DNA of 60,577 nucleotides from Podarcis muralis (taxonomy: Eukaryota), in contig NC_135666.1 in assembly GCF_964188315.1 (NCBI RefSeq), positions 29,701,424 to 29,762,000 on the forward strand. The letters run 5' to 3'. Both the position numbers and the translations under genes were made by a program. The notes beneath the pieces are model-generated. The model was not told the origin of the DNA. It ran no database searches and worked only from the letters and a program-made list of their open reading frames with translations. Positions within the stretch are counted from its first letter, which is position 1. Each line of letters opens with the position of its first letter. Positions 35,300-48,320 of the stretch are shown piece by piece.

Positions 35300-35900
35300 G
35301 CGATACCACCTGGATGTTCTGTTATAAATCCCCTAGCAAATAATAAATGGATTAATAATAACAAGGTATGAGGTTCTTTTTNNNNNNNNNNNNNNNNNNN
35401 NNNNNNNNNNNNNNNNNNNNNNNNNNNNNNNNNNNNNNNNNNNNNNNNNNNNNNNNNNNNNNNNNNNNNNNNNNNNNNNNNNNNNNNNNNNNNNNNNNNN
35501 NNNNNNNNNNNNNNNNNNNNNNNNNNNNNNNNNNNNNNNNNNNNNNNNNNNNNNNNNNNNNNNNNNNNNNNNNNNNNACAAAGTAGTGCAGTTAATCATG
35601 GGAGATTTTTCTCTCTCTCCTTTTTGTGTATTCCTGATTAGAAGTCTAATTGCCTCCTTTCGGAAAGTAAAAATAACTGCGAAGCGACTCTATTTTTATC
35701 ATTAACAATGTTGACAATAAAATAAAATCAACTGGAATTGTAATCGAAAGGCAAATTTAGGGTGAAGGCACTTTTCCTCGGGTAGTTTATATTGCAATCA
35801 AGATTTGCCAAACCACTAACCGCATGTCTCATTTGCATATATTTGAAAGCATTACAGGAGCTTCTGTTTTCAATAGGGGGGGAAATGTATTACTGACAGA
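35300..35900. promoter_or_regulatory. Putative conserved non-coding element upstream of DLX6 (partly N)
   Basis: AT-rich, non-repetitive block with many TAAT/ATTA cores, an octamer ATTTGCAT (35831-35838) and near-MEF2 motifs, surrounding a 196-nt N-run. Conservation itself cannot be shown here. Confidence 0.5.
35382..35577. other. N-run, 196 nt
   Basis: Seen directly. Confidence 1.
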
Positions 35901-36499
35901 TCTCTGAGGATTCGCCCTCGGAGCAGGATGCTGAAAAAGCAGACACTATTGTACTGATCCAAGGACAGCGCTCCGAAAAACGAGTTCGCGCGCGCGCGCG
36001 TAGTAGGTGTTTGTGTGTTTTAAATGAATCCTTCCCCTGGGCACATTGCATCATCAGGAAAATACCTCAGGAAGGAACCCTGCTAATTTTGTCCAGAAGA
36101 ACTCTGAGTTACCATCCAGGATTCTAGACCATAATTTACAGTTCTTTACTGGGCACCGCTTTGGCTCTGAACGCCAAGGCTGGACAGTGTTGTTGTGAAT
36201 CCTAACGGACACGTGCGAGGCAGCGATAGCCTGCGATGCAACGACAGTAGGGAAAATAAATGCACATTCTTCTTTTTAATTGGAAAAAACCCCATAGCTC
36301 ATTGGAAGGGTGCTTGGCTTTGTAAAAGCGAGGGTGCAGCTTTGTTGTGGTTGTGTGCGGCGCAAAATACACGCGCGCGTGCCCGCGCACACATACATGC
36401 ACCCCAAGCGCCTGCCTAGCTAGCTGGCTTGCTGGCTGGCTGCTTCTCGCTCGCTGCGAGCTCTGAAGTTGTGCAGAAGGTGGGCTCGCGCTGACGCCA

Positions 36500-36560
36500 G
36501 TAGAAGTGCCCGGGCTGGGTGACGTCACGGGCGGAATGACCAATGGGGAGGCGCTGCCCT
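36500..36560. promoter_or_regulatory. CRE / GC-box / CCAAT module ~0.9 kb upstream of the DLX6 ATG
   Basis: TGACGTCA at 36520-36527, GGGCGG at 36529-36534 and CCAAT at 36540-36544, inside a CpG-rich block. Confidence 0.5.
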
Positions 36561-36731
36561 TTGGAGACCAACCATTCGACTTGTGGCGTTTTCTCTCTTT
36601 CCACCTCACCCCCCCCTTCCCGCTCCCGCTGTTGTTGTGTGTTGTCGTGCGCCTTCCCCTCCCCCTGCTGCCTCAAGTCGAAAAGCAGAAGCACAACTTT
36701 ATGAAAGAGAATCCACCTTAAAGAGAAAGGG

Positions 36732-44894: not shown

Positions 44895-45259
44895 TTGGGT
44901 TCAGCTCTCCCCAGGATCAATTGTGAACAAAGCCCCCAGCTGCAGTGCCATCCAATTTGAGGCAGACATTGGGGACAATTTAAGGTTTTTATCCATAAGN
45001 NNNNNNNNNNNNNNNNNNNNNNNNNNNNNNNNNNNNNNNNNNNNNNNNNNNNNNNNNNNNNNNNNNNNNNNNNNNNNNNNNNNNNNNNNNNNNNNNNNNN
45101 NNNNNNNNNNNNNNNNNNNNNNNNNNNNNNNNNNNNNNNNNNNNNNNNNNNNNNNNNNNNNNNNNNNNNNNNNNNNNNNNNNNNNNNNNNNNNNNNNNNN
45201 NNNNNNNNNNNNNNNNNNNNNNNNNNNNNNNNNNNNNNNNNNNNNNNNNNNNNNNNNNN
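44895..45259. promoter_or_regulatory. Intergenic enhancer I56i (ei), 5' edge visible, core inside N-run
   Basis: CCCCCAGCTGCAGTGCCATCCAATTTGAGGCAGACATTGGGGACAATTTAAGGTTTTTATCC (~44933-44994) matches my recollection of the start of mammalian I56i. The position ~1.3 kb past the DLX6 3' end fits. The next 260 nt are N. Confidence 0.8.
45000..45259. other. N-run, 260 nt
   Basis: Seen directly. Confidence 1.
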
Positions 45260-47819
45260 ATGGAAGAGGCTTCTGAGGTACAGCTGGTTGTGGGGTTCAC
45301 TGAATTATTCAGATTCGTGTTAGGGAGAGAGAAAGCTATCATACATTTAAACCGAGGGGTAGCCCCTTCCCTTTGTAGGAAGAGGCCCCAAGTCTTTCTG
45401 ATGAAGGATAATCCTCCCCAAACCAATGGAACCACAGGAAAAATGGGGATGCTGCGAGCGAAGCCACAAAGCCCGTCAGATAGGATGCAGATCCCAGTTC
45501 TCAGCAACGCTTCCTGGGAAGTGAGTACCATTGAGCTGAATGCGGCCTTCAGTGCCAAGGGAGTAAATATGTTCAGGATCAGGGCAGAGTTAGAGGATGG
45601 CAGGGCTCAGGCTGATGAAATCAGGGACAGAGCTGTCGTGATTTTGAGGATCTTGGACGGCAGATTGAAATCCGCTGAATTTCTAGTATGTTGGCTTAAC
45701 TGGAGGGGCTTGTTTTATTTATCCGGCCTTACTCATCGCCTCTACCCCTGCACAACACACATGCATCTCTCAAACTCCCCCCCCCCATACACACGAGCAG
45801 TGCATCCAGGATGACATGTTAACCTTTCACGGGTTAGTTCCTCCCATTTCACTAGATCTCGAGGGCTTGGTCCACTTTTAGTCTACCATCAAAATCCGGT
45901 TCTTGGTGGGAGTTGATGAGAAGGGTCCTCATCTGTCTGGTCTTCCCCCTCCCCATTCTTCTGTCTGTTGTGTAGCAGCGCAATCCTCTAGCGGGCTCTA
46001 CTCAGAAGTCAGTTCCATCGCTTTCAAATGGGACTCACTTTCAGGATTGGGACAATCGGTTCTCTCCGACTTCCTCTGAGCAATGTATAAGGAATCGCGC
46101 TCGCCCTGTCTGTGTTAAGAGCCGGAAGGACGATTTGCTCGTTTTTCAATGGACGTTTAGATAAAGCAGGGATCGTGGAAGATGCTTGCAGGAAGGGCCT
46201 CGGTGGCGGCGAGCTGGGGAGCCAGAAAGGTTTACCTGTCTGCTGTTGAGGGTGAGGGACGCTGACGCCGAGGCGCTCGAGAAACAGCGTCATCTATAGA
46301 TAAGAGTGGGACAATTGTGCCAGAATTGAGCAGGCTTCTCAAAAAGGGGTTCCTTTCAGGGCTTCACCAGAAAACTCTTTGCAGCTAAACAGAGGACACC
46401 CCCAGACCCGTAAAGTCCCTTAAATTAATCACATATCTAATAGTACTGATCCCACTTCCAGATAAACAGGAAGGGGTACCTGGGGAGGTAATACGGGGCG
46501 CGCGCAATGGCTTGTGCGTGTGGATAATCCCTCTTCCATTGAAATCCAAGCCAAAAGGCCCGCGTAGATCCGGATTGTTCCTGAGGAAGCGGAGCCTCAA
46601 AAGCAATAAACAACCCACGCAGAACTGGAGTGTTTGTTTGTGTTGTGTAAATGTTCTGAAGTAGAACAGGGAAAGAAACTGGCGGAACTCAGCCAGGCCA
46701 AATTTATAACCCCTTTAAACCGAGAAGAGGTTCTCCAGTCTGTTCAAGCAACATGGATTTTAACCCCCTCACTCCCCCTCCCCCGCAACACACATCCGAT
46801 TCCCAGCTCCATTAGAATGAACGGGTTGCTTTGCGAGATGAGACCGTGAAAAGGCTCGTGAAAGGGCCAAAGTAGAAGCAGGGCGGTGCGCCATTGAAAT
46901 ACATGGGATTTCTTTCCCAGTTTGGTGTGTCTCGCATAAAGTAGGAGCGGGAAGTAGAATCGGTATTTCGGCAGCCTGATTGCTGGGCTGGGTGTCTAGC
47001 TGAGCTGTATTCGACATACCCCTCTTAAAAACAAAAGGGAAAAAACCACACACTTGCTTTTAAGAACATTTACCTAGGGGAAATCCCGAAGGGGGTTTCA
47101 CAACCCTATTCTTTACTTCTCTACTCCGAAACGTCCCACGAATGGGATTTACTTGTAAGTAAGCGTGCAGTATCCTTTCAGACTTAGGGAAGACGAAGCA
47201 CACACACACGTACACCAGCTAACACAGTGGATCAGACCACTTTCAAGCAATGGGACGACTCTGCATTAAACATGGAAACCCAGATTTCGAAGGGAAAACA
47301 CCGTGGAGTATTTCTTTGTCATTCTCAACCGGGAGTTCCCAAATGGCACTTCACTGATGTTGACAACATAGCGAGTCCAACCCCCCCCCCCCGCCTCGCA
47401 ACACACATTCACCGGTTCGTTTTCGAGACAACACCCCCTTTCCATATACACCCCCCCTTATTCTGAACCTCTACGTGAGTCACTGAAAATGTGGGAATCC
47501 TGAGCCGCCCACCCAAGCCGCAGAGCGCCCCCCCAATAAAAGCTACAATAAAAGCAGGCAAACAAACAAACAAGTAAATAAATAAATGTGCGTCCGTGTA
47601 ACTCGCTTATCGAAAGGTCTAAGTAAGGAAAATCGAGAAATTAGAATGATCAGGGTTTCCTTTTTCTTTTCTTTTTCTTTCTTTCTTTTTTGCAATAATA
47701 AAAATAATAATAATAATAAAAGTAACCATCATTAAAACGTGAAGAGGTACAGCTGATGGGATATGCGGCAGCAGTCGAGGAGGTTTAAAACCGAACAAAA
47801 CAAAAAACTTACCCCCGTG

Positions 47820-48320
47820 CAAAACCTGTTAAGCAGAGATGAGGGTCTAAGGAAATCTATANNNNNNNNNNNNNNNNNNNNNNNNNNNNNNNNNNNNNNN
47901 NNNNNNNNNNNNNNNNNNNNNNNNNNNNNNNNNNNNNNNNNNNNNNNNNNNNNNNNNNNNNNNNNNNNNNNNNNNNNNNNNNNNNNNNNNNNNNNNNNNN
48001 NNNNNNNNNNNNNNNNNNNNNNNNNNNNNNNNNNNNNNNNNNNNNNNNNNNNNNNNNNNNNNNNNNNNNNNNNNNNNNNNNNNNNNNNNNNNNNNNNNNN
48101 NNNNNNNNNNNNNNNNNNNNNNNNNNNNNNNNNNNNNNNNNNNNNNNNNNNNNNNNNNNNNNNNNNNNNNNNNNNNNNNNNNNNNNNNNNNNNNNNNNNN
48201 NNNNNNNNNNNNNNNNNNNNNNNNNNNNNNNNNNNNNNNNNNNNNNNCACTACAAATGGGTTGCTGAGCTGAAAATGTACGATTGTAATTTCACGGGGCA
48301 CTCAATGAGTAATGATAGAG
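47820..48320. promoter_or_regulatory. Probable intergenic enhancer I56ii (eii), core inside N-run
   Basis: Second intergenic N-run (386 nt), between I56i and DLX5, the known order of these enhancers. Flanks are complex and AT-rich (GCTGAAAATGTACGATTGTAATTTCACGG). Positional inference, not a direct sequence match. Confidence 0.55.
47862..48247. other. N-run, 386 nt
   Basis: Seen directly. Confidence 1.

What the first reader, a model, noticed from the sequence alone, without database searches (positions are those of the whole stretch)
35382..48247. All four N-runs sit on the cores of the locus's most conserved non-coding elements: probable masking, not gaps
Seen: four short N-runs of irregular size (196, 137, 260, 386 nt), all in non-coding DNA around DLX6, none in the repeat-rich left third, and none opening inside a TE or microsatellite. 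The 45000 run starts ~60 nt into recognisable I56i sequence, and its length is about what the remaining I56i core would need. The others fall in an upstream TAAT-rich block, the DLX6 proximal promoter and the expected I56ii position. Known: DLX5/6 harbours ultraconserved elements nearly identical across amniotes. Inference: a contamination screen (or other homology-based masking) removed lizard DNA for being too human/mouse-like. If so, this assembly would falsely suggest enhancer loss, and its N-runs would act as a genome-wide map of ultraconserved elements.
Basis: partly seen in the sequence, partly recalled or inferred. Interest (0 to 1): 0.75.

Follow-up and report, generated by a model that had tools for sequence, protein, structure and literature searches.

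The report
Masked human-like enhancer cores near DLX6
The four short runs of N around the lizard DLX6 gene are most likely deliberate blanking of DNA that is nearly identical to human DNA (ultraconserved enhancers such as I56i), so they come from data handling and do not show a biological loss or a sequencing hole.

Summary
They are the only Ns in the window, all are non-coding, and none abuts a repeat. The window holds a convergent DLX6(+)/DLX5(-) pair.

Run 3 (45000-45259) can be tied to a known element. Five published mouse genotyping primers for the I56i ultraconserved enhancer map once each, in the expected order and orientation, to 44540-44974, just left of the run. They place the enhancer's left border between 44789 and 44944, so the run lies inside the ~450-bp I56i interval. 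Runs 1, 2 and 4 could not be anchored.

Masking is favoured over gaps, on indirect evidence:
- The lengths are irregular.
- The flanks of runs 1, 3 and 4 are unique and of moderate GC, while much harder DNA nearby was assembled.
- Raw reads of another individual cross the two inner edges at normal depth.
- Independent contigs over the spacer were all dropped by the read tool's filter.
- If this is the wall-lizard assembly, four gaps in 13 kb is very unlikely.

NCBI's FCS-GX would not mask such short stretches from the same kingdom. The likelier source is this scan's own human-likeness mask, not the public assembly. "Enhancer loss in the assembly" is unsupported. Another reader noted the same pattern elsewhere in this genome.

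The parts
35382..35577 (.). N-run 1 (196 nt), 1.9 kb upstream of the DLX6 ATG, inside an AT-rich, TAAT-rich unique block
   Evidence: Flank GC is 35%/35%. The flanks hold 12 TAAT/ATTA against a background of 4.3. No repeats and no flank duplication. Identity as a conserved element was not tested.
37140..37276 (.). N-run 2 (137 nt), 190 nt upstream of the DLX6 ATG. Probably in the 5'UTR, since a CRE (36520) plus CCAAT (36540) pair lies about 600 nt further upstream
   Evidence: Flank GC is 64%/65%, with a CT-rich left flank and a polypurine plus G12 right flank. Of the four runs, this is the one most compatible with a true gap.
45000..45259 (.). N-run 3 (260 nt), inside the interval predicted for the I56i (Dlx5/6 ultraconserved) enhancer
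   Evidence: Primer anchors put the left border of I56i between 44789 and 44944. I56i is about 450 bp (PMC8520905). Raw reads reach the right edge at depth 2.
47862..48247 (.). N-run 4 (386 nt), in the DLX6-DLX5 spacer on the DLX5 side of I56i. This is the position expected for I56ii, but it is not anchored
   Evidence: PMC3024246 numbers I56ii as I56.3 and I56i as I56.4, and I56ii is about 283-397 bp (PMC3695995). The four mouse primers that flank I56ii found no match.
44540..44999 (.). Unmasked left shoulder of I56i, orthologous to the mouse sequence at the border of the enhancer
   Evidence: Mouse primers from PMC8520905 Table 1 map once each: + 44540-44559 (2 mismatches), + 44569-44588 (2), + 44768-44788 (exact apart from a 3-nt insertion), - 44944-44963 (1) and - 44955-44974 (1). 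Chance expectation is 0-0.02 per primer.
45260..47861 (.). Unique spacer between runs 3 and 4, used for the read test
   Evidence: 19 runs from 6 studies hold it. 25 raw reads were laid at about 1.4x, and 2 of them run over the ends. No Logan contig covering the stretch was laid from any of three runs, although the index says they hold 76-90% of its words.
37466..42590 (+). DLX6-type gene: exon 1 ORF from 37466, homeodomain exon at about 39987-40178, last exon ending at the stop at 42590
   Evidence: ORFs. Pfam Homeodomain at 8.9e-12. Best PDB matches are DLX-5 and DLX-3 homeodomains. Exons were searched separately and not joined.
55289..59744 (-). DLX5-type gene, convergent with DLX6
   Evidence: Pfam DLL_N at 6.2e-21 on exon 1 and Homeodomain at 9.9e-13 on exon 2. 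Best PDB match is human DLX-5 at 7e-24.

Best explanation
The four N-runs are hard masks of real, contiguous lizard DNA. They were written over stretches that a human-likeness filter judged too similar to human sequence. The filter most probably belongs to this scan's own data pipeline and not to the deposited assembly. Only non-coding elements that are nearly identical between lizard and human pass such a strict threshold, so the masks fall on cores of ultraconserved enhancers. I56i is shown for run 3. I56ii and two DLX6 upstream or 5'UTR elements are inferred for the others. The less conserved shoulders and the coding exons stay readable. On this reading the N-run lengths are true lengths and nothing is missing from the animal's genome. 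Shown: the position of run 3 within I56i, reads crossing the two inner edges, easy flanks, and no flank duplication. Inferred: that the blanked letters are human-like, that the lengths are exact, and who applied the mask.
For: 1. Run 3 lies inside I56i. Five mouse primers map in order and orientation to 44540-44974 and bracket the enhancer's left border at 44789-44944. I56i is the 'Dlx5/6 ultraconserved enhancer': nearly identical between mouse and human over 450 bp and more than 90% identical across vertebrates (PMC8520905; PMC12297475). I56i and I56ii are present in Anolis (PMC3024246).
2. There are exactly two N-runs in a spacer known for two deeply conserved elements of comparable size: 338 and 283 bp conserved between catshark and mouse.
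3. The lengths are irregular (196, 137, 260, 386). The flanks of runs 1, 3 and 4 are unique, at 35-46% GC. Harder DNA was assembled without N: an 81%-GC stretch in DLX6 exon 1, (TC)35, (AT)28, and homopolymers up to 19 nt.
4. No contig-end duplication lies across any run.
5. Raw reads of another individual cover the inner edges of runs 3 and 4 at normal depth, and 2 of 25 run over the ends, as expected at about 1.3x. No coverage drop-out is seen.
6. Logan contigs of three independent runs that hold 76-90% of the spacer's words were all left out by the tool's filter.
7. The tool descriptions say that human-like reads and contigs are dropped and that some held stretches are masked as N.
8. If the genome is the wall lizard (another agent's note; 19 pieces match the 19 large scaffolds of PodMur1.0), the contig N50 is 714.6 kb (PMC6431182). 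Four true gaps in 13 kb would then be very unlikely.
Against: The scan's program labels the runs as assembly gaps. Run 2 sits in GC-rich low-complexity DNA where real gaps are common. In an older anole assembly the Dlx6 flank 'contains a lot of Ns' that were real gaps (PMC3024246). The DLX5 and DLX6 homeobox exons, and the I56i shoulder that is 90-95% identical to mouse at the primer sites, are not masked, so the filter would need a strict threshold (long exact words or more than about 95% identity). The tool itself warns that missing contigs prove nothing. The chance that a random gap lands on I56i is only about 5% for four gaps, so that coincidence alone is weak.
Confidence: 0.68

Rival explanations
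1. Ordinary scaffold gaps: the assembler could not join contigs here and wrote Ns of estimated length. The overlap with I56i is coincidence.
For: The scan program's own label. Irregular gap sizes occur in assemblies that estimate gap lengths or partly fill gaps. Run 2's flanks are 64-65% GC and low-complexity. The anole Dlx6 flank had many real Ns in an older assembly (PMC3024246). The clustering of the four runs is only modestly non-random (P = 0.033).
Against: The flanks of runs 1, 3 and 4 are unique and of moderate GC, while far harder sequence nearby is gap-free. No flank duplication. Raw reads cross the two inner edges at expected depth. Run 3 falls inside a roughly 450-bp ultraconserved enhancer. 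With a contig N50 of about 0.7 Mb (if the species lead is right), four gaps in 13 kb is very improbable.
Confidence: 0.15
2. The masks are in the deposited assembly itself.
For: The positional evidence is the same as for the best explanation. FCS-GX does have an action (FIX) that removes internal contaminant spans, and hard-masking from its reports is discussed (PMC10898089).
Against: FCS-GX applies automatic internal removal only to inter-kingdom chimeras. For same-kingdom cases it needs at least 10 kb and only flags them for review, and it uses 'highly conserved' intervals to limit false calls.
Confidence: 0.08
3. Mixed origin: runs 1, 3 and 4 are masks, and run 2, in the GC-rich DLX6 5' region, is a true gap.
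For: Run 2 differs from the others in flank composition: 64-65% GC, a CT-rich flank, a polypurine flank and a G12 run. It is also the shortest.
Against: The even harder DLX6 exon 1 just downstream (81% GC, triplet repeats) was assembled without N. 5'UTRs and promoters of developmental genes are often deeply conserved.
Confidence: 0.07

Closest known systems
K-mer or homology-based human-sequence scrubbing that overwrites matches with N (for example NCBI's human read scrubber for SRA data; cited from my own knowledge, not tested here)
   Same: Mask lengths are irregular and equal to the real sequence length.
   Different: Such tools act on reads, not on assembled chromosomes. The tool, word size and threshold actually used here are unknown to me.
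NCBI FCS-GX contamination screen (PMC10898089)
   Same: It can remove internal contaminant spans (action FIX), and hard-masking from its reports is discussed.
   Different: Automatic internal removal applies to inter-kingdom chimeras only. Same-kingdom spans must be at least 10 kb and are only flagged. Highly conserved intervals are handled separately.
Scaffold gaps in long-read plus Hi-C assemblies
   Same: They are also runs of N inside a chromosome-scale scaffold.
   Different: They usually have a fixed conventional length (my knowledge), sit at repeats or extreme composition, and are rare at a contig N50 of 0.7 Mb. Here the lengths are irregular, three of four flank pairs are easy sequence, and the four runs cluster in 13 kb.
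I56i / Dlx5/6 ultraconserved enhancer, source of the Evf2 (DLX6-AS1) lncRNA
   Same: It lies in the DLX6-DLX5 spacer nearer DLX6. The left shoulder matches five mouse primer sites at 18-20 of 20 bases.
   Different: The core itself cannot be read here because it is written as N. Enhancer activity in lizards was not tested.

Membership tests
   Run 3 lies inside I56i, which the literature describes as nearly identical between mouse and human over 450 bp. The letters themselves were not read, by rule. Runs 1, 2 and 4 are not anchored.
This needs spanning reads or contigs measured for length only. A loose check holds: the left border at 44789-44944 plus about 450 bp gives a right border at about 45240-45395, which fits a 260-nt run ending at 45259.
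   Raw reads of run X23 cover 45260-45346 at depth 2 and 47783-47861 at depth 0.84, and 2 of 25 reads run over the ends of the stretch. This covers only the two inner edges, at about 1.3x.
   No log for these coordinates is available.
Ordinary assembly gap | Flanks lie at repeats, low complexity or extreme GC, or carry duplicated contig ends | tested here: not met
   Not met for runs 1, 3 and 4: unique flanks, 35-46% GC, no duplication. Met in part for run 2 (64-65% GC, low complexity).
Ordinary assembly gap | Read coverage drops out at the gap edges | tested here: not met
   Depth at the two inner edges is at or above the mean of about 1.4x, and reads run over the ends. The sampling is low and the outer edges were not tested.
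Ordinary assembly gap | Gap density is in keeping with the assembly's contiguity | tested here: inconclusive
   Four runs in 13 kb against a contig N50 of 714.6 kb for PodMur1.0. The species and assembly identity rest on another agent's note (s1-179048) and the count of 19 pieces, not on my own test.
I56i enhancer (block around run 3) | Lies in the spacer of a convergent DLX5/DLX6 pair | tested here: met
   DLX6-type gene on + ending at 42590 and DLX5-type gene on - ending at 55289. The block lies at about 44.8-45.3 kb.
I56i enhancer (block around run 3) | Sequence orthology to mouse I56i | tested here: met
   Met for the left border and shoulder only: five primers, 0-2 mismatches each, in order and correctly oriented. 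The core is hidden.
I56i enhancer (block around run 3) | Forebrain enhancer activity and DLX binding | not testable with these tools
   This needs a reporter assay.

The most novel reading that the evidence does not exclude
The deposited lizard assembly itself, and not only this scan's copy, carries hard masks over its most human-like non-coding elements. Public analyses would then see false losses of ultraconserved enhancers and drop-outs of UCE markers, and the assembly's short irregular N-runs would form a ready-made map of lizard-human ultraconserved elements.
Probability: 0.08. Interest if true: 0.5.

Novelty: not a real feature. Interest (0 to 1): 0.18.

Why it matters
For biology, little: the underlying elements (I56i and its neighbours) are well known, and nothing suggests that the lizard lost them.

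For anyone reading this scan's animal windows, it matters in practice:
They should not be read as missing sequence, enhancer loss or poor assembly.
- They flag where the most conserved elements lie.
- If the masks turned out to be in the public record, that would be a data-quality problem worth reporting to the submitters.

Tried and rejected
- Rfam, at gathering thresholds and at E up to 10 over 33000-60577, gave no DLX6-AS1/Evf-type or other credible family, only low-complexity miRNA look-alikes. It therefore gave no model-based measure of how much is hidden under the Ns.
- The four mouse primers that flank the I56ii deletion, and three of the four primers that flank the I56i deletion, found no match at up to 3 mismatches. 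These lie outside the conserved cores in mouse, so this says nothing about run 4.
- TAAT/ATTA density of the flanks is only suggestive for runs 1 and 4 and is ordinary for runs 2 and 3.
- Logan contigs could not be used to test continuity, because no contig covering the stretch was laid.
- Several key papers are not held: Zerucha 2000, Ghanem 2003, Feng 2006, Poitras 2010, Berghoff 2013 and Cajigas 2018. Exact enhancer coordinates and the I56i-I56ii distance in mammals could therefore not be compared with the 2,603-nt spacing here.
- UCE catalogue papers gave no element list for DLX6.
- Steps left out under the operators' binding rule: laying reads on the N-runs themselves, and any look-up of the hidden letters in other copies of this genome or in human or mouse sequence.
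- DLX exons were searched one by one and never joined.
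Full report
**Observation.** The window has exactly four runs of N: 35382-35577 (196 nt), 37140-37276 (137), 45000-45259 (260) and 47862-48247 (386). There are no other Ns and no soft-masking.

The window carries two convergent distal-less-type homeobox genes.
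- A + strand gene has a first-exon ORF from 37466, a homeodomain exon around 39987-40178 and a last exon ending at the stop at 42590.
- A - strand gene has a first exon from 59744 (Pfam DLL_N, 6.2e-21), a homeodomain exon in 57263-57472 and a last exon ending at 55289.
- The - strand homeodomain is closest to human DLX-5 in the PDB (7e-24). The + strand one also hits DLX-5 and DLX-3 but less well.
- Together with the I56i anchors below, this is the DLX6(+)/DLX5(-) pair. I searched exons separately and did not join them.

All four runs are non-coding. Run 1 ends 1,889 nt and run 2 ends 190 nt upstream of the DLX6 ATG. Runs 3 and 4 lie in the 12.7-kb spacer between the genes. None abuts a tandem repeat. 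The 300-nt flanks have no second copy in the window apart from microsatellite-like similarity more than 100 nt from the edges. No sequence is duplicated across a run, as unmerged contig ends would be.

**What run 3 sits on.** A paper on mice lacking the Dlx intergenic enhancers prints its genotyping primers (PMC8520905, Table 1). I searched these 18-21-nt mouse sequences against the window.
- The four primers used to screen the I56i knock-in each match once: + 44540-44559 and + 44569-44588 (2 mismatches each), and - 44944-44963 and - 44955-44974 (1 mismatch each). Chance expectation is 0-0.02 per primer.
- One primer that flanks the I56i deletion matches + 44768-44788 exactly, apart from a 3-nt insertion.
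- Order and orientation are as in a mouse amplicon.

A deletion-flanking primer lies outside the deleted enhancer. The knock-in screen has to span the border of the replaced segment. So the left border of I56i falls between 44789 and 44944.

I56i is described as nearly identical between mouse and human over 450 bp and more than 90% conserved among vertebrates. It is the 'Dlx5/6 ultraconserved enhancer' (PMC12297475). Its right border should therefore lie near 45240-45395. The 260-nt N-run (45000-45259) sits wholly inside the enhancer, and the readable left shoulder ends 25 nt after the last primer site.

**The other three runs.** The literature describes two deeply conserved elements in this spacer, I56i and I56ii. 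They are 338 and 283 bp conserved between catshark and mouse (PMC3695995), and both are present in Anolis (PMC3024246). That paper numbers them I56.3 (I56ii) and I56.4 (I56i) in the dlx5-dlx6 cluster. If the numbering runs from dlx5 to dlx6, which is my inference, I56i lies nearer DLX6 and I56ii nearer DLX5. Run 3 and run 4 are arranged that way.

This is positional plausibility only. The mouse primers flanking I56ii lie outside the conserved core and found no match. Runs 1 and 2 have no external anchor. Run 1's flanks are TAAT-rich (top 5% of the window). Run 2 lies in GC-rich low-complexity DNA. It is probably in the 5'UTR, since a CRE/CCAAT pair lies at 36520/36540.

**Mask or gap?** I was bound not to fill the Ns or look their letters up, so the tests are indirect.
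1. The lengths are irregular.
2. The flanks of runs 1, 3 and 4 are unique and 35-46% GC. The window's hard sequence was assembled without a single N: 81% GC over 200 nt in DLX6 exon 1, (TC)35, (AT)28, (GA)31, and homopolymers up to 19 nt.
3. I laid reads only on the N-free stretch between runs 3 and 4 (45260-47861).
   - 19 runs from 6 studies of the same organism hold it.
   - In a raw-read run of another individual, sampled at about 5%, 25 reads were laid (about 1.4x, as expected).
   - The bins at the two N edges have depth 2 and 0.84, and two reads run over the ends.
   - So no coverage drop-out is seen at these edges.
4. Three runs kept as Logan contigs hold 76-90% of the stretch's sampled words according to the index. 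From none of them was a contig covering the stretch laid: two runs gave nothing, and the third gave only two pieces of about 20 nt from one 541-nt contig. The tool says a filter leaves records out. Its description says that records matching human DNA are dropped. The tool warns that a hole proves nothing, so I count this as suggestive only.
5. Another agent's note calls this genome the wall lizard (s1-179048), and the scan has notes on 19 pieces. PodMur1.0 has 19 large scaffolds and a contig N50 of 714.6 kb (PMC6431182). If that is the source, four true gaps within 13 kb would be extremely unlikely. I did not verify the species myself.

The FCS-GX paper states three relevant rules (PMC10898089):
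- Automatic internal removal is for inter-kingdom chimeras.
- Same-kingdom chimeras need at least 10 kb and are only flagged for review.
- Highly conserved eukaryotic intervals are calculated and used to limit false calls.

I therefore place the mask in the scan's own handling of animal genomes (0.68). Ordinary gaps get 0.15, a mask in the deposited assembly gets 0.08, and a mixed origin with run 2 as a true gap gets 0.07.

A strict threshold is needed to explain why the homeobox exons and the I56i shoulder (18-19 of 20 bases identical to mouse at the primer sites) are not masked. The 31 nt covered by the two overlapping primers at 44944-44974 carry one mismatch, which splits them into exact runs of 13 and 17. 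That is compatible with a filter based on long exact words, but this is speculation.

**Against my reading.** Nothing here proves what lies under the Ns. The program labels them as gaps. Run 2's surroundings are gap-prone. An older anole assembly really did have many Ns beside Dlx6 (PMC3024246). The odds that at least one of four random gaps touches I56i are about 5% by my estimate, so that coincidence alone is weak.

**Verdict.** 'Masking, not gaps' is the best reading. The 'false enhancer loss in the assembly' corollary is unsupported. This is a data-handling artefact over already known ultraconserved enhancers. It has low biological interest but is useful for reading N-runs elsewhere in this scan.

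Noticed in passing
window 37466-38050 (+): DLX6 exon 1 encodes very long homopolymer tracts: poly-Gln, poly-Pro, a run of ten His, and about 20 Gly/Ala. GC reaches 81% over 200 nt at 37843. It was nevertheless assembled without any N.
   Followed up: no
window 36520-36546 (+): A perfect CRE (TGACGTCA, 36520) is followed 12 nt later by CCAAT (36540), about 930 nt upstream of the DLX6 ATG. This is a candidate core promoter, and it would put N-run 2 in the 5'UTR and not in the promoter.
   Followed up: no
window 35578-35900 (+): A unique AT-rich block to the right of N-run 1 holds many TAAT cores and a perfect octamer (ATTTGCAT at 35831). It looks like the readable shoulder of a homeodomain/POU-bound conserved element.
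   Followed up: no
window 45260-47861: Another individual (run X23) differs from the window at 45610, 46115, 46155, 46182 and 46357, and has AGT inserted after 45561. This is ordinary polymorphism in the spacer between the two masked elements.
   Followed up: no
window 45260-47861: Three runs kept as Logan contigs hold 76-90% of the sampled words of this stretch by the index, yet from none was a contig covering it laid. This shows how the read tool's filter can empty a whole neighbourhood next to human-like elements.
   Followed up: partly
window 44768-44788 (+): The lizard has a 3-nt insertion (TCA) relative to the mouse sequence at the site of the I56i deletion-flanking primer, just outside the enhancer.
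   Followed up: no
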